A stretch of DNA of 64,000 bases from Podarcis vaucheri (lineage: Eukaryota): assembly GCA_965113315.1 (NCBI GenBank), contig OZ220365.1; one strand, 5' to 3'. This document shows, piece after piece, positions 25,465-54,336 of the stretch (within the stretch, counting starts at the first letter, position 1; each line of letters starts with the position of its first letter). A program made the translations under genes and the position numbers. The notes beneath the pieces were generated by a model that ran no database searches, was not told the DNA's origin, and saw only the letters and a list, made by a program, of their open reading frames with translations.

Positions 25465-28063
25465 TCCCTGTCTGCGTTGTCTGATTATCCTCCACATTTG
25501 CTGCCTAACCGCATGTTATATCCTTCTCCCCTTTTTGGCAGCTCTGGATCACTCCTGATAGACCCATTCCCATCCGTGGCTACCTTGACCCAATCTGGAA
25601 GAGCCCTGATTTGTTCCAAATCATCCCAGTTCTATTCAGTGTTTAGCTGGAGAGGTAGCATTGTTCATACCAATCTGAATACTGGTGACTGGAGCGTATG
25701 ACTGGCAAATTGCTATTGTGCTCATGCCTGGAATGTGGGCTTTGAGGCATCTAGTTGGCCACTATGACAACCAATTGCTGGGACTAGCACTGATCCAAAA
25801 GTGCTCTTCATTTAGTGCCGCTACTATTGTCTCTTCCTAATTCACACATCATACATTACATTGCTCATTTGAGTGAAAAGATGTGGATGTTAAAAGTTGG
25901 TTTTACAAAGCCGAAAGTTGGACAATTGCTATACTGTACCTGTTTCACGCCAGTCCGTAACTGAGTACAAATGACAAAGATCCAGGTTTGCAGGTATAAT
26001 TAGTGAGTGTTGGGGAGGAATCTTCATTCATAAGCAAAGTCAGAGAGGTTCCATATCCAGGACCAATATCACTTTCATTTAGTAGTTCAATGCACACTGT
26101 TGAGCTTCTATAACAGACTCTTTATTTCATCAACTAAGTGGTACAAAAACAAAATACAGAAAATGTTCTGCATGGCTGAAGTTAATCAGAACACGTTGGC
26201 TTCAGTACATTAGACTCCAAATAAAGCACAGAGTCAGGTAAGAAAACTATCAAGAACATGGTCACCATCTGTTTCCAAGCAGCAGTTAAAATCAATGTAG
26301 GGAATCTCATATAACATTGTGCTGGTGCAGAGCTTTTAAAATATCAAGATAGCGTAGTGAAGAGGGATTTTGATGTAAAGCACAAATAGGTTCTGCTATT
26401 ATTTTCTCATTCGACTACATAAATAACAGACATAAGTGTGACTAGGAGTTCCTTAAGCTCAGTCAAAAATAGTTTTTGTTTTAAGTATATGCCATGGGTC
26501 AGTGATGGAGTTCAGTCTAGGGGAGAATTCACAAGCTGATTTATCAGGTTCTGGGCAGTGTTGCAGCCAGCACCATGCAAACACAGAGTGGAGGGTTGAC
26601 CCTGATGTCAGCAGCCTTCTGCATGCCAATACAACCCTACACCTTTCCATTATGCTGTTGCATAGTTTTGTCTGCAGTACCGCCCTCACATTTACGGATG
26701 CATCCCACTAAGCACAAGGTAAGTATTAGGAAGGCTCATTCCGGGTCTGACACCTTGCAACAGCTTTTGAGGGTTTCACCTGCTTCACTGGCTGCCACTA
26801 ATACTGACTACTCTGACTGTCTTCAGTCCAAAGACTCTTCAAGGCTTCAACCTTGCAACTTGAGATACTAAATTTAACCTGGGGACTTTTATCTTTAGAG
26901 CATCATCTCCAAAACTGAGCTAGGTCCTCTCTAGTGGTAATGTCTGGATTGCAAGATTCTAATTCTACAATAATTTGATATGAGACAAGCTTTTCCTCAA
27001 CACCACACCTACCGACCTACAAAATGCATTGAATAATCTGGGTGGCTGTAGGTTGAGATCCAATGTGTGATCTAGATCTGGATTTCTGTTAGCATCACTG
27101 CTTAATATTATTTACTTGAAATAATTGTAATAGATCTTCAGATCTGGGACTCATAAAAATGTAACAGTAATAATTTATATGCTGTTATTTAAAGCAATCG
27201 GTTGTCTTGGGAAGATGATCTTTCATCATTAGACTGTTTACTTGTAGCACTGCTTTTCATAATGATAAATGCAAGCAGCTTCCTTTAGAAAAAAACTTTT
27301 TTAAAAAAAAAACATGTGAAATATCAGTTCTAAAATGCAATCTAGATCACAAATTGGAGAAGTCGCATACCACTTTAACAAATAAAATATTTTCATGAAA
27401 GTCTATCTTTTAATATGTCATCCCACTATAAGACCTCACATTAAAAACAGACTTTAATGTGAAATGATTTCATTTATAAAAGTGGTGTTAATTCAAAAAA
27501 ATGTCACCATGATATCAAACCCCATACTGATTAATGCTGGAGATGATACCTCAAAAATTCAAGACACTCAGACTGCTGAGGGCAGAATTATATAATTTGT
27601 CACCTGAGGGTGCAGCTGACATTTCAGGTACCGAATAAATGCTCAAGGGAAATAGAGAATGACGGGTTTGTGAATCCCTATCATATCAAGGAATTTCATT
27701 TTGCATTGCAGGTTTTGTAGTTTTAAGAATGCATGGGAGTTGTAGTTCAACACATTACCCACCTCTGTCTTAGACAACCACTAAATTGACAAATGGTTTG
27801 ACTCAGCTTCGTATGCTATTTGTTAGAAACAAACTAGCACATGGAGTACCTGCTTTTAGCTGATTTCTCCTTAAGCTATGTGAATTTATCAACGCCGAAC
27901 ACTGACAAAGCGTGTTCTCCCTAGCAGAGAGCACGTGTTGCGGTTGGGAACAGGCCACCCTCCTGTGACTAGGCAAATTTAGTTCAATCATGGCCACTTA
28001 AAGGGTTAAATTGGGTTGCTGGGGTGTTTTGAGTGTTACTTTTTTGGAGGAGGGGTCAGAGTC

Positions 28064-28071
28064 TATATATA
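28064..28071 (+). promoter_or_regulatory. Putative TATA box of the YR element internal promoter
   Basis: TATATATA about 130 bp inside the inferred 5' end, preceded by CAATCA (about 27985) and followed by a pyrimidine-rich tract and a CpG island. Confidence 0.5.
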
Positions 28072-28424
28072 CAGGGACCCAACTTTGGCACGGCCTCTTG
28101 GCCGTTTTCCTCGGATCAAGGAGCTCAAAGACGGTTGTATTTGAACCTACCTGAATTCTTAATTCTCGCCCTTATTTCCCCCTTTTACTTCTTTACCTTT
28201 CCCATCTCCTCCCATATTCTCTTACTCTCTCTTCTCCTACTGTTTCCCTTCTTATTCTATTGGTCTGTTTCCTTTCTAGTTTGCTCCTTTCCTTACTGTT
28301 TAACTCAGCCCTGGTTATAATTAGAAGGCTGAGGGTGGGCACCCCCCCCCCGGCCTGGGGTAGGCCTGGGAGGGCAGGCTTGCGGCCGCTTTGGCCCACT
28401 GGAACACCCCCTCCCCGATCGCTA

Positions 28425-29030
28425 GTGCCGCGGCTGCGGATCGCGGCCGTTTCCTCGCCCCGTCTCCACCCCCGCCTCGCGGTTTAGGCCTAGTAACGGC
28501 CTAGAGGTCGGCCTCCCGCCGGTGGGGCGCCACCGGACCGCGGACTCGCCGCGCTTTTCCCTGGGCCTGGGATCGCGGCCTCCCGGCTGCCGGGCCCTTC
28601 CGGGCTGCTTTTTCCCCCGACCTTGCTGGTCCGCTGGGGAGCTTCCGAGCGCCCGGCCCGGCTCCGTCGGGCGAGGCGCGGTGAGTGGCCTTGCTCCTGC
28701 TCGGCCCCAGGAGCTCGGGGTGTGGCGGAGTTTACGCGGCCGAGGATTGCCGCCGCCTCCTTGCCCCCCCACCCCTACCTGTGTTTAGGCCTAGCGTCGG
28801 CCTAGAGAGCGGTCTCCCACCGGTGGGGCTCCCGACGGGCGGCGGACGCGCCGCGCCTTTCCCCGGTTTGGGGGGTTGTGGCCTCACGGCCGCCGGGCCC
28901 TGCCGGGCTGTTTCCCCCTCCTGACCCTGCTTACCTGCGGGGAGGCTTCGGACCACGCCAGGCCCGGCTCCGTCGGTGCGGCCGCCGCGCTCGGTCCTCC
29001 GCCATTGGTGCGGCGCGCTCCTGCGTGGCC
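28425..29030 (+). repeat. Diverged tandem duplication (about 301-bp period) forming a CpG island in the YR element leader
   Basis: GTTTAGGCCTAG at 28482 and 28783, each followed by matching blocks (CGGCCTAGAG, CCGGTGGGGC, GCCGGGCCCT, GGCCCGGCTCCGTCGG). Confidence 0.8.
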
Positions 29031-29154
29031 CTAGGGGAGTGGTTGGCGCGGCGGAGCTCCCGCTAGCCCCCCTGCGGTTCTGGATCTGAGAGCAGGCCAA
29101 GGCTTCGGTGCAGCCTGCACTGTTGATTTGCCTGCTCTGGCTTCAATTGCTTCC

Positions 29155-29408
29155 TGGCCCTCTAGTGGCCGCCTGGTGTAACTGCAGGCTGCCTGCTCGT
29201 GAGCTCCCCTAGTGGCTCAGAGCAGCACTGCAGCTCTTTAGCTCATTGCTTAGAGCAAATAGAGCCACCTTCTGGCCACCTGAGTATTGCAGCCTGCTGC
29301 AATTTAACTGGTAATAGCTCTATCTAGTGGCTCGACCTGGTATTGCGCTTCATCCCACTGCGCTTAAATTGCTAGTGCCCCTGCAGGACGCAGTGAGGGG
29401 CGCACTGT
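29155..29408 (-). promoter_or_regulatory. Tandem array of 4-5 co-oriented CTCF-like sites (core plus upstream motif)
   Basis: Minus-strand reads: CTGCAGTTACACCAGGCGGCCACTAGAGGGCCA, CTGCAGTGCTGCTCTGAGCCACTAGGGGAGCTC, CTGCAATACTCAGGTGGCCAGAAGGTGGCTC, GCGCAATACCAGGTCGAGCCACTAGATAGAGCTA, and a weaker CCTGCAGGGGCACTA. These match the CTCF consensus CCAC/GYAGRKGGC with a TGCAG/A upstream module. Confidence 0.75.
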
Positions 29409-29653
29409 GTTATAATAATCATTAGAATTACTTAAATTAATTACCTTCCTTGAATTTTATTTCTGTAGTAATTTTAGTTCTTCTAGTAGTGGTTAGTCAA
29501 GGGTTCCTAAAGTGTTTTGGCTCACTAGTAGGTACTTTCCAGTGCTCCAGGGTTAAAGGCCTTTGGCCATTCTTGGTTTCCTTTATCCAAAGCTAACAGT
29601 CTGCTCGGGTTTATTGATACAGGCCTTCTTTATCCTTTGTTTAACTAGCAGGT

Positions 29654-31192
29654 ATGGCTCCAAAGAAAGCTTCAACCCGCGCTGGCACATCTGTTTCTAC
29701 AAAACGGCCTATTAAGGGGCCATCTCAAGCGCTCCGCTCTTCGGCTCCGAGACAACCAGTGGGGCGGATCCAGTCCTTGGTGGCAAGCATGGCCGGTGAT
29801 CCTGAAGCCTTGTCTCGCTTCGCAGCGGACATGGACGGTTTCCTGCAACAATGCTCCAGTCAGCCTTCCACGTCTGCACGGCCGCCTCGTCCAGTGAGGG
29901 TGTCGTCACCGGTGTCGTCTGCCTCTAGCGAGGATGGGAGAGAAGGGTTGTCAGCTGGGGGTGGCAGGGTTGATTCCCAATTAACCCAGCCTTGTTACTC
30001 ACCTGCAGTTCGCGGCCTTCCACGGAGGACAAGTCGCTCTTCCAGGAGGGCACCAGGGGGGAGGAATCCTCCGGCATCTACCAGCCGCAGGGGCAGGAGC
30101 GCCCACCCTCCCGCCGAGGTGGCGTCTGGTTCTGGCCTTTCACTCCTTGTCTCTTCTCCATCAGTCCCAGATTCAGCGCAGGATCCAGGTGCCTCTCAGC
30201 CAAATTCTGACTCGGCCTCTTCTATGGAAGATAGCTTACCAGTCCCGGCTAAGAGATCATTGGGGGGGAAGCGTCACCGCAGAAGATCTTCCCGGAAGCG
30301 TGCCAGACGTAGGAGGGCGGATTCTTCTTCATCTTATACGGGTACGTCATCTAGCTCTGACGATGAGGCTGGTAAATCAATGGAACTTTATTGGGGTTTC
30401 GGTGAGACGGCTTCTGGGCTCCCGAGGTGGGCCTGGGAACGGCGCGCCAATACGCACCGTGCTAGGTATGGTGCAGTACAAGAGTGCAGGGATGGTGTGT
30501 TGGTACCTGACACTAAGGTCTCTACCAATTCAGCCAGGGACATTATTCCTGGTTCACACTTGGCTACGAAGCTTCGGTCTAGGATATTGAATGGCCGTTA
30601 CGTAGACATTTTTAAGTTGGCCCCACCTTCGGAAGATTAAGAGAAGGGGCCTTCTTCCAAGAAGCGCCAGGGCGCTGCCACTTCAGACAGAACATTCGAA
30701 CTTTGGCTCGACTGTTTTCAAGTCTTCGCTGGTGTTGTTGTGGCAGCCTATCCTCGGAGGTCTCTTCACTTGTTTGTTTACCTATCCATTGTTCGTTCTG
30801 CTTTCACCAAAGCTGGTGAACGGGCTGCGATCAAATACGATGAAAATTTCAGGCGCCGAGCGGCCAAGATTCCCACGGCCCGTTGGGATCGTAGGGATCT
30901 CGATGTTTGGACCACCCACGTGGCCCCTTTCATTGATAAGAAAGCGCCAGAACAGCAGAAATCTAAGCCGGCAGCCTTTAGGTCTGGTCGCAGGCTTATA
31001 TGCTGGGACTTTAACAAGGGCTCCTGTCAGCGACAGGGGTGCAGATATGCCCATGTCTGTGAAAAGTGCAATGGTTCGCATGCTGCCTCCTCTTGTTTTA
31101 GTGGTCGCCGGCCCTTTCGAGGGGGCAGAGGGGGTTCTCAGCAAAGCCACAAACCAACCCCCTCCCCTGCAACTTCAGCTGCAGGGAAATGA
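29654..31192 (+). pseudogene. YR-retrotransposon ORF1 (Gag-like, about 512 codons, C-terminal Cys/His zinc finger) with one premature stop
   Basis: ORFs 29654..30640 and 30740..31192 are in the same frame, separated only by TAA at 30638-30640 (..PPSED*EKGPSSKKR..). Ser/Arg/Pro-rich N-terminus. C-terminal CWDFNKGSCQRQGCRYAHVCEKCNGSHAASSC finger, as seen in ORF1 of DIRS-order elements. Confidence 0.8.
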
Positions 31193-32798
31193 CACACTGA
31201 CCTCCTTGGCGTACACTCCTGTTCGCCTACAGCCCCTGCAGTTATGGCTGCAGTCTTACCCTAATAGGGAGGCTGCGGCCTATTTGTTCAATGGTTTTTC
31301 TGTGGGTTTTCGGATTCCTGTAGCCATGCCTCCCATGGCACAGAATCCTGCTAATCAAAAGTCAATTCGCGAGCTGCCTCAGGTCGCTCGCAAGAAGATA
31401 GCGAAGGAAGTGGCCATGCAGTGCATGGCTGGCCCCTTTGATAGACCTCCCTTTCATAATTTGCATGTATCCCCATTGGGTATCGTGCCTAAAAAGGCCC
31501 CTGGTGAATTTCGTTTAATTCATAATTTGTCACATCCCACAGGCACGTCAGTCAATGACGTTATTCCTCCAGAGCTATGCTCCGTAAGGTATGCTTCTCT
31601 TGATCAAGCGATCAAGATGATTAGGAAGTTCGGCCATGCAGCATTATTGGCGAAACGCGATATTGAATCAGCCTTTCGCCTTTTGCCAATTCACCCAGAG
31701 GACTTTTGGCTGCTTGGCTTTCAGTTTGAGGGCAGCTATTACTTTGACAAGGCCATGCCTATGGGATGTTCCGTGGCATGTGCCGCCTTTGAGGCATTTA
31801 GTACCTTTTTGGAGTGGGCCCTAAAATTTAAAACAGGTTTGGGCGGAGTCACTCGTTATTTGGATGATTTTTTATTGGCCTCGGCGAGCGATTCTGGCGA
31901 GTGCGCAATGTTGCTGCAGGCCTTTGCTGACATTACGCAGGAACTGGGAGTTCCGCTTGCAGCCGACAAGACGGAGGGTCCTTCCACCCAGCTCACTTAC
32001 TTGGGTATCCTATTGGATACTGTGGCTCAAACTTCCAGCTTGCCAGAGGACAAGTTGGTTGCTTTGAGGAGGATCATTGAGGACCTACTTCCTCTGAAAA
32101 AGGTGTCTCTCAGGCAGCTCCAGTCACTTTTGGGACACCTGAATTTCGCCTGTAGAGTGGTGGCCCCCGGGCGCCCCTTCTGTTCACGCTTGGCGCGCCT
32201 CACTGTAGGGTTGAAGGCTCCGCATCATCGGGTTCGCCTCTCTAGTGAGGTGCGAGCGGATCTTCGGATCTGGCTTGAATTCCTGAAGGAATTCAATGGG
32301 GTGTCCTTATGGCAGGACACTTTGAACCTGCATAATGACTTCCAGGTGCATTCCGATGCGGCAGGCTCCTTGGGTTTCGGCCTATATTGGAAGGGTCGAT
32401 GGTGCGCTCAGCGTTGGCCGGCTGAGTGGCAGGGAAGTGAGATTACGCGGGATCTAACTTTTCTCGAGTTTTTTCCAATTGCAGTGGCAGTACATTTGTG
32501 GGTCGAGGAGTTCAGGAACCGCCGTGTCTGCTTCTGGACCGATAACCAGGCGGTGGTGAATGTGTTGGCCAAGCTTTCATCTCGCTCGCCCAGGGTGTCT
32601 GCCCTTTTGCGAGCATTTGTGCTGCATTGCTTACGTTGTAATATAGTTTTTTCTGCACGTTTTATTCCCGGGGTGTCAAATGAAATTGCTGATGCTCTGT
32701 CCCGTTTTCAGATGGAGCGGTTCAGACTTCTGGTTCCAGAGGCGCGGATACGTCCGGAATATTTCCCGGATCATCTCTGGAACCTTGGCAGCAATTAG
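30732..32798 (+). CDS. Reverse transcriptase-RNase H of DIRS/Ngaro-type retrotransposon (real start probably about 31100-31190; overlaps ORF1 in another frame)
   Basis: Uninterrupted frame. RT motifs SPLGIVPKK, FRLIHNLS, KRDIESAFRLLPIHP, MPMGC and YLDDFL. RNase H motifs SDAAGSLGFG, LEFFPI, TDNQAVV and NEIADALSR. Confidence 0.93.
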   Translation: MLLWQPILGGLFTCLFTYPLFVLLSPKLVNGLRSNTMKISGAERPRFPRPVGIVGISMFGPPTWPLSLIRKRQNSRNLSRQPLGLVAGLYAGTLTRAPVSDRGADMPMSVKSAMVRMLPPLVLVVAGPFEGAEGVLSKATNQPPPLQLQLQGNDTLTSLAYTPVRLQPLQLWLQSYPNREAAAYLFNGFSVGFRIPVAMPPMAQNPANQKSIRELPQVARKKIAKEVAMQCMAGPFDRPPFHNLHVSPLGIVPKKAPGEFRLIHNLSHPTGTSVNDVIPPELCSVRYASLDQAIKMIRKFGHAALLAKRDIESAFRLLPIHPEDFWLLGFQFEGSYYFDKAMPMGCSVACAAFEAFSTFLEWALKFKTGLGGVTRYLDDFLLASASDSGECAMLLQAFADITQELGVPLAADKTEGPSTQLTYLGILLDTVAQTSSLPEDKLVALRRIIEDLLPLKKVSLRQLQSLLGHLNFACRVVAPGRPFCSRLARLTVGLKAPHHRVRLSSEVRADLRIWLEFLKEFNGVSLWQDTLNLHNDFQVHSDAAGSLGFGLYWKGRWCAQRWPAEWQGSEITRDLTFLEFFPIAVAVHLWVEEFRNRRVCFWTDNQAVVNVLAKLSSRSPRVSALLRAFVLHCLRCNIVFSARFIPGVSNEIADALSRFQMERFRLLVPEARIRPEYFPDHLWNLGSN

Positions 32799-33682
32799 TC
32801 CTTCAGGGAGTAGCGGCATCGGTTTCCCCTTCTACCTTGAGATCTTATAGTAAAGCATGGGCCGATTTTCAGGCATTTGTACAACAGTCAGCTAGGTTAC
32901 TAGTTGGGGTCCCCCCCACCTCTTCGCAGGTGCTACAATATTTAGCCCATTTATTTCAGCTAGGGCGTGCGGGTAGGACACTTAGGATGCAGGCAGCTGC
33001 TATATCATTTTTCTGTAAGACACATTTTGATACCGATCCTTGTGCAAAATTTGTTGTTTGCAGAGCCCTAGAGGGTTGGGGCCGTCTATGTCCTTCTCAG
33101 CCGACAAACCGACGCCCCATCTCGTTTGAATTATTGAGCAAGATGCGCAAAAGTCTGAGGGTGGTGTGTTGGTCTACCTATGAGGCTCGCCTTTTCGCGG
33201 CTGCCTTTTCAATCGCCTTCTTTGGAGCTTTGAGAGTAGGTGAATTGGTAGTGGAAGACCACCGGGATGGTCGTTCCAGGGGCCTTCTGCTCCAGGATGT
33301 GCAATTATCCCCTGCTGAACTGAGAATTACGATTCGGTATTCAAAGACGGATCAGAGGGGCAAGGGCGCTCTCATTTGTCTTCCTGCCACTGGGGCGGCA
33401 GGCCCTTGCCCAGTAAAGGATGTTAATAAGTATCTAGCGGTGCGAGCGCACGGGGATGGGCCGCTGCTTCGGCACGAGAATGGGTCACCCCTTACAAGGC
33501 ACCAGTTCGCAGGGGTGATGCGTAAAGCTATCCTGGCCTGTGGTGGCGTGGCCACAGATTTTGCCCCCCATTCCTTCAGGATAGGGGCTGCCACGACTGC
33601 AGCTCATTGGGGTTTGTCAGCTGCTAGAATTCAGGATTTGGGGCGTTGGAGGTCAAATGCGTTCAAGGGATATGTTCGTTAA
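32714..33682 (+). CDS. Tyrosine recombinase (phage-integrase family) of the retrotransposon
   Basis: Catalytic motifs FGALRVGEL (R), SKTDQ (K), HSFRIGAAT (H-x-x-R), GRW and KGYVR (Y). The frame is open from 32693 and overlaps the RT C-terminus. There is no ATG before the domain (the ORF track starts at TTG 32837). The start given is the first full codon after the putative acceptor at 32711. Confidence 0.92.
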   Translation, partial: GAVQTSGSRGADTSGIFPGSSLEPWQQLVLQGVAASVSPSTLRSYSKAWADFQAFVQQSARLLVGVPPTSSQVLQYLAHLFQLGRAGRTLRMQAAAISFFCKTHFDTDPCAKFVVCRALEGWGRLCPSQPTNRRPISFELLSKMRKSLRVVCWSTYEARLFAAAFSIAFFGALRVGELVVEDHRDGRSRGLLLQDVQLSPAELRITIRYSKTDQRGKGALICLPATGAAGPCPVKDVNKYLAVRAHGDGPLLRHENGSPLTRHQFAGVMRKAILACGGVATDFAPHSFRIGAATTAAHWGLSAARIQDLGRWRSNAFKGYVR

Positions 33683-33725
33683 CAATTTTAGTGTCTGATA
33701 CTGTTTTGGTTTATTTATCCCAGGT

Positions 33726-34298
33726 CTGCCAGCCGTACGCGTCTGGATGGTGGGCCACAGCATCATCCATTGGGCTGGTGTCGCAGCACGGCAGTCCGGA
33801 TTGGGTCCAGGTCTCGGCCTTCCTTCACACGTTCGGGTGTCCTGGCTGTCCAGATGAGGAATGCGGTGGTCGGAGTTTTTGCCACGAATTCGAAGGCAGT
33901 TGCTCTTGGAAGGGCCGCCAGAGGCTATTGTGGTGCAGCTGGGAGAGAATGACCTGGTTGCCATGGACTGCTTATCATTACGTGCTGCAATTTTGGCTGA
34001 CCTGGAGACGCTGCGGGCAATGGTGCCCACAGCCAAGTTATTTTGGTCTAAGCTTTTGCAACGACGCGTTTGGTTGGGAAGTCGTTGCCCGGTTGCCACA
34101 GAAAGGGCCAGGAAACGCATCAATGCAGCAGTTTCCAAAAGGATTGTGGAACTGGGTGGAGAGGTGATCTTTCACCATGAAATCTCCTATCCTGCGGCAG
34201 CTCTCTTTAGGGCCGATGGAGTGCACCTTTCTGCTTCTGGGAATGAGGTTTGGCTAGGTGCGGTGGTGGCCAAGCTGAGGTCTTGGCTGGGGTTGTGA
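33726..34298 (+). pseudogene. SGNH/GDSL hydrolase (esterase) ORF of the retrotransposon, with one premature TGA
   Basis: Block I VWMVGHS (33741-33761), block II RxGMRW, block III QLGENDL and block V DGVHLS. In-frame TGA at 33855-33857, probably CGA>TGA CpG decay. The downstream part is ORF 33861..34298. Confidence 0.85.
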
Positions 34299-34648
34299 GT
34301 GGTTTGGCGGTGAGCTGAGGGCTCTATGGCGGTTAGGTGCTGGTTAAATTGGTGCTTGGAGGGGTAAGTGCCTACCCCTCCAAATGAGGCGAATGGGAAT
34401 TCCGTTAAAGGAAATCCAGGGGCTTGCCATTCTTTTGTCCTTGTCCCCGGAGTCGGACTTGGGCCGTGCAAGCCCCACAGGAACATGAGGGTGAGAAGTA
34501 ATGGTCTGTTTCCCGGCTTTATTTCTCACCCAATACTTGTTTCCCACGCTGGCTTCCGCTGGTGTCCGGAAGGCCAGCCCTGTCCCTGAGGGCAAGGACA
34601 GATAGTCATAACCAGTGCCTAAGCAACCACTCACATTTTTTGTATTTG

Positions 34649-34654
34649 AATAAA
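34649..34654 (+). terminator. Polyadenylation signal of the YR element
   Basis: AATAAA about 95 bp from the inferred 3' end, followed by a GT-rich tract (TGATGTGTGAAGTGTG). Confidence 0.6.
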
Positions 34655-36612
34655 GTTGTGGCCAAAATTATGCCAAAAACCTTAAACAAAAATTGATGTG
34701 TGAAGTGTGAATTATTGGGGGGCTACTGTGACTCAACACGCAACCTAAGAAATGTGTTTTGTTTTTAGCTGGCTGCTTTCAGAATTTAACAGTAGCAGAG
34801 AGTGAATTTTGCTGTAATAATTGTATAAAGATTTGCTTCCCTTTATATAAAAAAATCCAAATTGATAAAATGGTTTGCCAACTCCATGTCCTCTTTATAA
34901 TTAAAACCAAATCATTAACTCAGTTGGGCATCACTGCTCATGTGTGAAGGAACACTCTGGAACACACAGGGATATTGCAAACCTAATTGTTTTTGACACT
35001 GACAATATTATTAAAGGTCCCCTTTGGATTGTCAGGTAATGTTACAGTCATTTGAGTTCTACACATTTAAGTACCTGATGAAAAAGTAAGATTCGTCATT
35101 TACCATAAAAGGAGCAGAGCTTCTTCTTCTTTTTCGTAGGCCCAAAATTCAGAGCGCAAAGAGTATTTAAAAACACACTTGCATTTGCTGGCCTTTGAGA
35201 AAAATTCAAATGCTTTGAAGCTTCCAGATTCACTCTTTGGTTCAAAACCTTTGGGAAGTGTGCCTGAATATTTTCAACAACATTTCTGCTCGGGTTAATG
35301 CAGGAATCATTGCAGCCATGTTTTAAATGGCTATATTTGCTGGATAATTACCATTCATTTGGCAATAAGCTAGATTCAGCCTGCTTCATAGAGTGCTGCA
35401 GTTTTATTTAATAATTTAAGCCACATTTCTGTTTGTTCAGTACCAGCTCAAAATACTTTGTAATGCTGGCAGTTCTTTGCCTGTTTATAATTTATTTATC
35501 CCATTATTCTTGGATTGCAGACCTAATCGTTCCACTAGGTTTGTTCTTTTGAAATAACTAGCAATACATTTATGTTTATGGATGATATACGTAGGCTATA
35601 TTTATCATGCCGCTTCTGATTTGACATGCTGCTTGGGCTATCAAAGATTATCTGAGGAACTTGATGCACCGTACTGAAGGTGTTAAGATAGGTTTAAGGT
35701 GCTATTTTAAGGAAATATAAATTGCTTGGGAAGAGCCATTCATTCTTCTTTAACTTGAGGTAGATTTGTGAAGCCATTTGATGACCTGACTGTGAGTTCC
35801 TTTCCTTCTGCATTTTCCTATGTGCTGTAGGGTTGCACAATTTCATTTAGGAACTTGGTAGCTGTGCTGCGACATGGGAAGGAGGGGAAAGATCCCTCAC
35901 TCACTTCATGCAGATCCTTCGAAGGCCTAGTCCTGAAATGCATACCATTTGAATGGCAATGTCCATCAACTGTGGGGGGCCCTAGCCCCTAAAATATTTT
36001 ATTGGGGGGCTGAAAGGACCTTAGCCCCTAGGAGTTGGCTCCTATGGTGCACTGCTTAGGGTGACCTGCTTACACATCACCAAAACAGAACACCAGAAAA
36101 AGAGACTGCAGATTTTCAATTTAGATGAATAGGTGCCAATTTAGAAATGATGGATTGTATCCAACTATGTTTTCTTCAGAGTAGACCCACAGGACATGAA
36201 CAGACCCAAATTAGTTATGTCCACTAATTTCAGTGGGTCTGTTCTGAATATGACTAATGCTGGATACAACCTAGTTACAGCACCATAATTTTAACAGAAA
36301 TGCAAGACATCTGCAGCTACAAAAGCTGAGGCTGCTGAACAAAATATTGGACAGGGGTCTGCCAAGGGGCATTATTGCTGTTAATTTTTTTGGATCTTAC
36401 AATTTATGTGGAAATTGTTCTATTTGGTTGGGTACTTTTTGAAATTCTGTTTATTGTTTATGACTACTTTTGTTACGTTTCTAGTCGTGTATTTTTTTTA
36501 AGTTGTAAGCTGCATTGGACATTATTTTAACTTTAGAAAGACAGTATACAAATAAAATGACTGATTGACTGATTGATTGGTCTCACCATAGTGGGAAAGG
36601 CTATGACCGAGT

Positions 36613-54200: not shown

Positions 54201-54336
54201 GCACAATATTGCCTTTGAGCAATGTTTTGAGCCAGGGTTGGTTGGCCCAAATAGATTGGCCAGCAGGCGACACAGTTTTCAAGAACTAACCTCAGTAGCA
54301 GGGAACACTTGGGGAAGTCTGGCCTCTAAATACGTA

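What the first reader, a model, noticed from the sequence alone, without database searches (positions are those of the whole stretch)
29155..29408. YR retrotransposon carries a tandem array of co-oriented, full-length CTCF-like sites in its 5' leader
Seen in sequence: four strong sites (29155-29187, 29201-29233, 29262-29292, 29315-29347) and one weaker site (29373-29408), about 45-60 bp apart and all on the minus strand. Each strong site has a CTCF core-like CCA(C/G)(T/A)AG(A/G)(G/T)(G/A)G motif plus the upstream TGCAG/TGCAA-type module 11-13 nt before it. The spacers between sites are unrelated, so the motif is retained rather than a generic tandem repeat. Established: CTCF zinc fingers 9-11 read this upstream module, and oriented CTCF clusters block cohesin loop extrusion. 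Inference: the element encodes its own insulator between its CpG-island promoter and ORF1. This could protect the promoter from silencing and would drop a directional chromatin boundary at each insertion. I am not aware of this being described for DIRS/Ngaro elements.
Basis: partly seen in the sequence, partly recalled or inferred. Interest (0 to 1): 0.85.

Follow-up and report, generated by a model that had tools for sequence, protein, structure and literature searches.

The report
CTCF-site cluster in lizard retrotransposon leader
A tyrosine-recombinase (Ngaro-like) retrotransposon in a lacertid lizard genome carries, between its CpG island and its first gene, a short row of same-direction sequences that closely match the two-part binding site of the genome-folding protein CTCF. 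This resembles the insulator of the fly gypsy element, but protein binding has not been tested.

Summary
The observation largely holds. On the minus strand at 29153-29348 there are four co-oriented CTCF-like sites, 47-60 bp apart. Each has a CTGCAGTTCC-like upstream module 7-9 nt before the CCA of the core.

- **Site strength:** two sites are strong (15.7 and 19.0 bits), one is moderate (11.6), and one has a defective 3' half (3.3). The fifth site is not supported.
- **Chance:** shuffled sequence never reproduces the cluster. No other core-like hit in the 64 kb has the upstream module.
- **Selection:** the sites differ from each other at 8-10 of 19 positions yet keep high scores (P<=0.002).
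- **Other copies:** contigs from related lizards show paralogous copies with such units placed directly before ORF1. One of these has a near-consensus core (23.7 bits) and a different linker.
- **Spacers:** they are not wholly unrelated, because the array is a decayed ~55-bp tandem repeat.

The host element is Ngaro-like (gag-like, RT, YR and SGNH ORFs). This copy is old, low-copy, has a stop in ORF1 and has no detectable terminal repeats.

The spacing and position fit promoter-associated clustered CTCF/CTCFL sites at least as well as a pure insulator. Binding and function are untested.

The scan holds unchecked notes of other transposon-borne CTCF sites in this genome, but none of this array on other DNA.

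The parts
29153..29187 (-). Site 1. Core CCACTAGAGGGC at 29157-29168. Upstream module CTGCAGTTAC at 29178-29187, 9 nt before CCA.
   Evidence: PWM score 15.7 bits and upstream match 9/10. Exact IUPAC match. The core is unchanged in the orthologue-like contigs of organisms D and E. The changes at 29153 and 29155 fall on low-information positions.
29200..29233 (-). Site 2. Core CCACTAGGGGAG at 29204-15, with a defective 3' half. Upstream module CTGCAGTGCT at 29224-33, 8 nt before CCA.
   Evidence: PWM score 3.3 bits and upstream match 8/10. This unit is the piece most widely shared with paralogues: depth in bins 29172-29239 is 3-7 times that of the flanks in all four runs. One paralogue has a duplicated 34-nt unit.
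29260..29292 (-). Site 3. Core CCAGAAGGTGGC at 29264-75. Upstream module CTGCAATACT at 29283-92, 7 nt before CCA.
   Evidence: PWM score 19.0 bits, the best in the 64 kb. No changes are listed in organisms D and E.
29315..29348 (-). Site 4. Core CCACTAGATAGA at 29319-30. Upstream module GCGCAATACC at 29339-48, 8 nt before CCA.
   Evidence: PWM score 11.6 bits and upstream match 6/10. It has 4 substitutions in organism E and 1 in organism D, so it appears to be decaying.
29373..29408 (-). This is a degenerate repeat unit, not a scorable CTCF site.
   Evidence: PWM score below 3 bits. The best upstream match has too long a linker.
28400..29130 (+). CpG island (GC 0.66-0.77, CpG o/e 0.6-1.05) just 5' of the array. 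It contains a diverged ~303-bp tandem duplication (28429-28670 versus 28735-28976, 74% identity).
29410..29644 (+). AT-rich, CpG-poor segment of the leader between the array and ORF1. It is missing from paralogues whose array unit abuts ORF1.
   Evidence: Joints 29171>29643 and 29217>29645. No contigs of organism F cover this segment. GC 0.36.
29654..31192 (+). Gag-like ORF1. It is interrupted by one in-frame stop at 30638-30640. Homologues of 505-565 aa occur only in lacertids.
30732..32798 (+). RT ORF, with a weak RNase H-like tail.
   Evidence: RVT_1 E=1.4e-11; RVT_3 E=0.15
32837..33682 (+). Tyrosine recombinase ORF.
   Evidence: Phage_integrase E=5.5e-5, 23.4 bits, below the curated 27.1
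33861..34298 (+). GDSL/SGNH hydrolase-like ORF.
   Evidence: Lipase_GDSL_2 E=2.5e-5, below the curated cutoff. SGNH ORFs are known in Ngaro-like elements (PMC9210276).

Best explanation
The array is a cluster of real binding sites for CTCF, and probably also for its amniote germline paralogue CTCFL/BORIS. It is built into the 5' regulatory region of a lacertid Ngaro-like retrotransposon family.

It arose as a ~55-bp tandem repeat. The repeat has decayed, while the core and upstream modules of at least sites 1 and 3 were kept.

The following is inferred, not shown:
- When unmethylated, sites 1 and 3 bind CTCF through ZF3-7 (core) and ZF9-11 (upstream module). Sites 2 and 4 bind more weakly.
- All motifs are on the minus strand, so the CTCF N-termini face the CpG island and the upstream flank.
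- Cohesin extruding from upstream would therefore stall here. This would hold the CpG-island promoter at a loop anchor and separate it from the element body and from downstream DNA.
- The close same-strand spacing beside a CpG island is that of clustered CTS (2xCTS) elements. These mark active and germline promoters and can be switched on by CTCFL.
- So the likeliest benefit to the element is an open, unmethylated promoter that is competent in the germline. Boundary or insulator activity would then be a consequence at the insertion site.
For: - **Motif quality and clustering.** Scores are 15.7, 19.0 and 11.6 bits. 0 of 2000 shuffles reproduce the cluster. The only two IUPAC matches in the window are both here.
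- **Upstream module.** It lies in the correct orientation at a 7-9 nt linker in all four sites, at 9/10, 8/10, 7/10 and 6/10, against 0 of 52 background core hits reaching 7/10. The published consensus and linker range are in PMC12885311 and PMC3368268.
- **Vertebrate-wide motif.** The two-part motif is found in lamprey, chicken and human (PMC5504073).
- **Motif-preserving divergence.** Sites differ at 8-10 of 19 positions, yet scores stay high (P<=0.002). Per-column conservation tracks the information content of the matrix (rho 0.49, p 0.03).
- **Paralogous copies in other runs**. Array units are joined directly to ORF1. One copy has a duplicated 34-nt unit. One copy in organism F has core CCACAAGGGGGCGC (23.7 bits) with the same TGCAGTTAC module but a different linker.
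- **Neighbouring CpG island.** It keeps CpG o/e around 0.9 although the insertion is shared between species.
- **Clustered CTS literature.** Clustered CTS elements are tied to promoters, CTCFL and transposon activation (PMC4562119, PMC10832218).
Against: - There are no binding, chromatin or RNA data. No RNA run was found.
- Only two sites are strong. The unit most shared among paralogues (site 2) has the poorest core.
- The sites share ancestry, so they are not four independent events.
- The orthologue comparison is not significant. Site 3 has 0 changes and site 4 has 4 changes in organism E, against about 7% in the spacers. The listing for 29138-29239 may also be incomplete.
- Most family copies share no alignable leader upstream of 29645 at 80% identity or more.
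- This copy has a stop in ORF1 and no terminal repeats, so it is not an active element.
- The transcription start site is unknown, so calling the region a "leader" is an inference.
Confidence: 0.5

Rival explanations
1. The array is a neutral, decaying tandem repeat in a fast-evolving retrotransposon 5' region. One ancestral unit happened to resemble a CTCF site and was amplified by tandem duplication. The resemblance has no function, and the sites are unbound or masked by heterochromatin or methylation.
For: - The units align over their whole length, including spacer blocks.
- Mean pairwise identity of the core (65%) and the upstream module (63%) is not far above the overall column identity of 59%.
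- Sites 2, 4 and 5 are degenerate.
- There is no significant excess of motif conservation in the orthologues.
- The copy is dead.
Against: - Random divergence of the observed size would have destroyed the PWM score (P<=0.002).
- A paralogue keeps, and even improves, the core and keeps the upstream module while its linker differs.
- Both modules lie at the correct spacing in all four units.
Confidence: 0.22
2. This is host co-option of this one old, fixed copy. The island plus array now serve as a host promoter or boundary at this locus, so the conservation reflects host function and not the element's biology.
For: - The leader sits at single-copy depth.
- Colinear contigs at 94-97% identity in organisms D and E suggest a shared, fixed insertion.
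- The CpG island is maintained.
- ORF1 is broken.
Against: - CTCF-like units also occur in paralogous copies next to ORF1.
- The other ORFs are still open.
- No host gene has been shown to use this promoter.
Confidence: 0.1
3. The repeated motif is read by a different zinc-finger protein, for example a lineage-specific KRAB-ZNF repressor that targets the element. The CTCF likeness is then incidental.
For: - Transposon leaders are common KZFP targets (general knowledge).
- The best-shared unit (site 2) departs from the CTCF 3' half in a conserved way.
Against: - The match covers two separate CTCF modules at the right spacing and orientation.
- Variation between the sites falls at positions where CTCF tolerates change.
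- No candidate protein is known.
Confidence: 0.1
4. The array is a cis-acting nucleic-acid signal of the element itself, such as a structured 5' leader RNA, a packaging signal or a tyrosine-recombinase target.
For: - Its position is in the presumed leader.
- The recombination sites of YR retroelements are poorly defined.
Against: - The RNA fold is not better than shuffles (z = -1.36; 21 of 200 shuffles fold as well).
- There is no convincing Rfam match: the only row is snoR9 at 19.1 bits against a gathering score of 90, E=0.48.
- The cores are not palindromic (read directly from the sequence).
- There is no matching repeat at the 3' end.
Confidence: 0.04

Closest known systems
gypsy insulator of Drosophila (12 Su(Hw) sites in the 5' UTR of the gypsy retroelement; PMC2374998)
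   Same: A tandem array of degenerate sites for a multi-zinc-finger architectural protein. The sites are separated by short variable spacers. The array lies in the 5' untranslated region between the promoter and the first ORF of an autonomous retroelement, and is about 200-340 bp long.
   Different: The protein differs (CTCF-type motif rather than Su(Hw)). The host is a vertebrate. The element is a YR retrotransposon, not an LTR element. There are only 2-4 usable sites. Insulator activity has not been demonstrated here.
Transposon-borne CTCF sites (rodent SINE B2, dog SINEC-Cf, lamprey hAT and Gypsy families; PMC3368268, PMC5504073)
   Same: A mobile element carries a full two-part CTCF motif. 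As in the lamprey hAT family, the cores here are CpG-free.
   Different: Those elements carry a single site per copy and are high-copy, mostly non-autonomous families with ChIP evidence. Here there is a tandem cluster in a low-copy autonomous YR element with no binding data.
Clustered CTCF target sites (2xCTSes) bound by CTCF+BORIS/CTCFL (PMC4562119, PMC10832218)
   Same: Two or more same-strand motifs tens of bp apart. The papers report 30-40 bp linkers and 33-58 bp in TSP50. Here the core-to-core spacing is 47-60 bp. The cluster lies next to a CpG-rich promoter-like region, and such sites are linked to germline and transposon transcription.
   Different: That class was defined in mammals by occupancy. 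Neither occupancy nor CTCFL expression was examined for this lizard.
Ngaro-like YR retrotransposons with an SGNH ORF (Xenopus DIRS-53_XT type; PMC9210276)
   Same: Four ORFs in the same order: gag-like, RT/RH, YR and SGNH hydrolase. There is no methyltransferase domain.
   Different: No split direct repeats are detectable in this copy. A CpG-island and CTCF-like leader has not been described for these elements.

Membership tests
Two-part vertebrate CTCF binding site | Core motif (CCASYAGRKGGC-type, read by ZF3-7) scoring well against the CTCF matrix | tested here: met
   Met for sites 1 and 3 (15.7 and 19.0 bits) and moderately for site 4 (11.6). Not met for site 2 (3.3) or site 5. The matrix was recalled from memory.
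Two-part vertebrate CTCF binding site | Upstream CTGCAGTTCC-like module, in the same orientation, a short variable linker 5' of the core | tested here: met
   Matches of 9/10, 8/10, 7/10 and 6/10 at 9, 8, 7 and 8 nt before CCA. The background rate is 0 of 52. The consensus comes from PMC12885311.
Two-part vertebrate CTCF binding site | Occupancy by CTCF in vitro or in vivo | not testable with these tools
   No ChIP or EMSA data are reachable.
Clustered CTS (2xCTS) class | [quoted passage not shown] | tested here: met
   CCA-to-CCA spacing is 47, 60 and 55 bp, all on the minus strand. Compared with PMC4562119.
Clustered CTS (2xCTS) class | CTCF and BORIS co-occupancy, with active promoter or enhancer chromatin | not testable with these tools
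   There is only indirect evidence: the adjacent CpG island has CpG o/e around 0.9.
Transposon-spread CTCF sites | The motif belongs to the family consensus and recurs in many copies | tested here: inconclusive
   Paralogue fragments with such units lie next to ORF1 in 3 of 4 runs, and there is a depth peak at 29172-29239.
gypsy-type retroelement insulator | Tandem sites for an architectural zinc-finger protein in the 5' UTR of the element | tested here: met
   This is sequence-level evidence only. The array lies between the CpG island and the ORF1 ATG at 29654. The transcription start site has not been mapped.
gypsy-type retroelement insulator | Enhancer-blocking or boundary activity that depends on the bound protein | not testable with these tools
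   No assay is available.
Ngaro-like YR retrotransposon | Gag-like, RT/RH and tyrosine recombinase ORFs without a methyltransferase domain | tested here: met
   RVT_1 scores above its cutoff. Phage_integrase scores 23.4 bits, below the curated 27.1. There is no methyltransferase hit.
Ngaro-like YR retrotransposon | SGNH hydrolase ORF after the YR ORF (amphibian-type Ngaro) | tested here: met
   Lipase_GDSL_2 E=2.5e-5, below the curated cutoff. PMC9210276.
Ngaro-like YR retrotransposon | Split direct repeats A1 ... B1 A2 B2 | tested here: not met
   No repeat longer than 13 nt is shared between 27600-29660 and 33600-35200. The copy may be truncated or decayed.

The most novel reading that the evidence does not exclude
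A vertebrate counterpart of the gypsy insulator. A lacertid Ngaro-like YR retrotransposon family carries, as a selected part of its own 5' control region, a tandem cluster of complete two-part CTCF/CTCFL sites. The element would use the host's loop-extrusion and germline CTCFL machinery to keep its CpG-island promoter open. Each new insertion would therefore add an oriented CTCF anchor.
Probability: 0.3. Interest if true: 0.75.

Novelty: new variant of a known kind. Interest (0 to 1): 0.55.

Why it matters
Transposon-borne CTCF sites are known mainly as single sites in mammalian SINEs and in some lamprey elements. Arrays of insulator-protein sites in a retroelement leader are known only from Drosophila gypsy-type elements, which use Su(Hw).

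A tandem, oriented, full-length CTCF-site cluster inside an autonomous YR retrotransposon of a reptile would show that vertebrate mobile elements can carry ready-made architectural or promoter modules. It would also give a natural system for testing three things:
- how clustered and oriented CTCF sites act next to a CpG-island promoter, using polymorphic or paralogous insertions in Podarcis;
- whether CTCFL drives germline transposon expression outside mammals;
- how transposons reshape 3D genome boundaries in squamates.

If the sites are unbound, this is simply a decayed tandem repeat with a striking look-alike motif.

Tried and rejected
- **Fetching other copies.** Only fragments from read laying were available.
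- **Metagenome scan.** A scan with the conserved ORF1 start 20-mer gave 8 loci (L001-L008). None has any further similarity to the element, so these are chance matches.
- **Other copies in the window.** There is no second copy of the element or its leader.
- **Tandem Repeats Finder.** It finds no array, because the repeat is too decayed.
- **RNA-structure reading.** Rejected: fold z = -1.36. The only Rfam row is a sub-threshold snoR9 match.
- **Terminal repeats.** A search for SDR or ITR/ICR repeats was negative.
- **Translated search across the array.** Not possible. No ORF longer than 42 aa crosses the array, so paralogous arrays could not be reached that way.
- **The search of earlier findings by sequence.** Blank.
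- **Whole-window IUPAC counts.** These are not above chance on their own. Only the co-location of the matches is informative.
- **RNA evidence.** No run on record as RNA holds the stretch.

Full report
**What is in the sequence**

Read on the minus strand, the stretch 29140-29420 contains a series of units. Each unit has a CTGCAGT/CTGCAAT-type 10-mer, then a 7-9 nt linker that often ends in GG or AG, then a CCA(C/G)(T/A)AG... core.

The CCA positions are 29168, 29215, 29275 and 29330, which gives spacings of 47, 60 and 55 bp.

I scored the cores with the MA0139-type CTCF matrix. The scores are:
- Site 1: 15.7 bits.
- Site 3: 19.0 bits, the best hit in the whole 64 kb.
- Site 4: 11.6 bits.
- Site 2: 3.3 bits, because CCACTAGGGGAG lacks the 3' GGC.

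An independent IUPAC search for CCASYAGRKGGC with up to one mismatch finds only two matches in the window. These are sites 1 and 3.

**The upstream module**

The literature gives the ZF9-11 module as CTGCAGTTCC-like. It is separated from the core by a variable linker bridged by ZF8 (PMC12885311). The two parts together form the 33/34-bp motif (PMC3368268).

The four sites match this 10-mer at 9/10, 8/10, 7/10 and 6/10, with 9, 8, 7 and 8 nt to the CCA.

At random window positions the chance of a match of at least 7/10 within that linker range is 1.3%. The chance of at least 9/10 is 0.02%. None of 52 other core-like hits (at least 6 bits) in the window reaches 7/10.

No dinucleotide shuffle of 29100-29450 (0 of 2000) gives three same-strand hits of at least 11.5 bits.

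Two corrections are needed: only two sites are strong, and the fifth is not a site.

**The array is a decayed tandem repeat**

Tandem Repeats Finder reports nothing. MAFFT, however, aligns the units at 59% column identity.

The spacers are 16-30 nt long and share short blocks of the AGCAATT-AAGC and GCAGGC types. The sites are therefore related by descent and are not four independent events.

**A test for selection**

The 19-mers differ from each other at 8-10 positions. If that many random substitutions are applied to any one site, the score of the other strong or moderate sites is reached in at most 0.65% of trials. Most comparisons give P<=0.002.

Per-column identity among the units correlates with the information content of the matrix (rho 0.49, p 0.03). 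The divergence has therefore preserved the motif.

**The host element**

Downstream of the array lie four ORFs:
- ORF1 (29654-30640) has no Pfam family.
- An ORF with RVT_1 (30732-32798).
- An ORF with a sub-threshold Phage_integrase match (32837-33682).
- A GDSL/SGNH-like ORF (33861-34298).

This is the gene content of amphibian-type Ngaro-like elements (PMC9210276). No methyltransferase domain was found. I also found no split direct repeats or ITR/ICR structure.

ORF1 homologues occur only in lacertid lizards: Podarcis muralis, P. lilfordi and Zootoca vivipara. They are 505-565 aa long. They align in one frame through 29654-31189, across a single in-frame stop at 30638-30640. This copy is therefore not intact.

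Upstream of the array is a CpG island at about 28400-29130, with GC up to 0.77 and CpG o/e 0.85-1.05, against 0.33 for the whole window. The island carries a diverged ~303-bp duplication.

The array itself is CpG-poor (o/e 0.29) and its cores are CpG-free. The same was noted for the lamprey transposon-borne CTCF sites (PMC5504073).

**Other copies and other species**

The only access to related DNA was one read-laying run on Logan contigs of four runs from four coded organisms. It showed the following.

- *Copy number.* From 29645 onward (ORF1) there are many diverged contigs, with summed depth about 10-20 times that of the leader. The leader 28900-29640 is covered by essentially one contig path per run.
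  - That path is identical in X1 (organism A), about 97% identical in organism D and about 94% identical in organism E.
  - I read this as an old insertion shared between species. It belongs to a family whose leaders are mostly too diverged to align.
- *Array units in paralogues.* Paralogues nevertheless carry array units.
  - Two contigs in X1 join a 24-nt match to the site-1 core directly to 29643.
  - One contig in X18 (organism E) carries the 34-nt unit 29183-29216 twice and then joins 29645.
  - Bins 29172-29239 are 3-7 times deeper than their neighbours in all four runs.
- *A paralogue in X20 (organism F).* A contig runs into 29178 from a sequence whose reverse complement contains CCACAAGGGGGCGC. 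This scores 23.7 of a maximum 28.4 bits.
  - That core is preceded by the same TGCAGTTAC module, but 5 of the 9 linker bases differ.
  - This is one clear case of the motif being conserved while the spacer changes.
- *Orthologue-like contigs.* Site 3 has no listed change in organisms D or E.
  - Site 1 changes only at PWM positions 17 and 19.
  - Site 4 has four changes in E.
  - Spacers in 29240-29410 differ by about 7%.
  - The direction fits "strong sites kept, weak site decaying". It is not significant, and the table may omit changes in 29138-29239.

**Alternatives examined**

- The plus-strand RNA does not fold better than shuffles (z = -1.36).
- There is no convincing Rfam match: the only row is snoR9 at 19.1 bits against a gathering score of 90, E=0.48.
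- The cores are not palindromes.
- Nothing at the 3' end matches the array.
- A reading in which a host promoter was captured is weakened by the paralogues that carry units next to ORF1.

**Mechanism (inferred)**

The two-part CTCF motif is common to lamprey, chicken and mammals (PMC5504073). A lizard CTCF is therefore expected to read it.

With all motifs on the minus strand, the N-terminal, cohesin-blocking side of bound CTCF would face the CpG island and the upstream flank. Cohesin coming from upstream would stall at the array. The promoter would then sit at the loop anchor, and the element body and downstream DNA would lie outside the loop.

That insulator is 340 bp long and has 12 Su(Hw) sites in the gypsy 5' UTR (PMC2374998).

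However, same-strand motifs tens of bp apart beside a promoter define the clustered-CTS (2xCTS) class. [quoted passage not shown] BORIS can convert such sites into transcription start sites, including those of dormant transposons (PMC4562119, PMC10832218). BORIS arose in early amniotes (abstract of PMC5973138, listed).

For a retrotransposon, a promoter-opening module that works in the germline is at least as plausible a benefit as insulation.

**Novelty and verdict**

Full-text searches found no paper connecting CTCF with DIRS/Ngaro elements, and none describing transposon-borne CTCF arrays in lizards.

Other first-reader notes in this genome mention single CTCF-like sites in a MITE and in an L1-like element. 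They also mention several Ngaro+SGNH copies. None mentions this array.

I rate the finding as a new variant of a known kind. The known kind is transposon-carried CTCF sites; what is new is a tandem cluster in the leader of a YR retroelement.

My confidence that these are functional CTCF-family binding sites is about 0.5. The overall interest is moderate until binding is shown.

Noticed in passing
window 28429-28670 and 28735-28976: The CpG island contains a diverged (~74% identity) tandem duplication of about 303 bp. It is reminiscent of promoter monomers in other retroelement 5' regions.
   Followed up: partly
window 30638-30640: A single in-frame stop interrupts the gag-like ORF1. Podarcis homologues (505-565 aa) read straight through in the same frame to about 31189. 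The 3' part of ORF1 overlaps the RT ORF.
   Followed up: yes
window 29644/29645: Similarity to most family copies starts abruptly here. Loose ends in four runs end in ...TGTCTCTGAC or ...TGTCTCTAC just before it. Leaders are therefore swapped or evolve much faster than ORF1.
   Followed up: partly
window 29410-29640: An AT-rich, CpG-poor 230-bp segment lies between the array and ORF1. It is skipped in paralogues (joints 29171>29643 and 29217>29645) and has no contigs in organism F. It may be a secondary insertion.
   Followed up: no
window 29948-29966 and 30047-30065 (+): Two moderate plus-strand CTCF-like cores (11.3 and 10.3 bits) lie inside ORF1. They are divergent to the minus-strand array.
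   Followed up: no
window 54257-54275 (+): An isolated strong CTCF-like core (15.4 bits) lies outside the element. It has no upstream module.
   Followed up: no
window 27600-29660 versus 33600-35200: There are no split direct repeats and no ITR/ICR between the two ends of the element. The copy lacks the termini that define Ngaro or DIRS elements.
   Followed up: yes
window 28066-28075: A TATATATAC box lies at the 5' edge of the element, followed by a pyrimidine-rich tract (28160-28300) before the CpG island. It may be a transcription start region.
   Followed up: no
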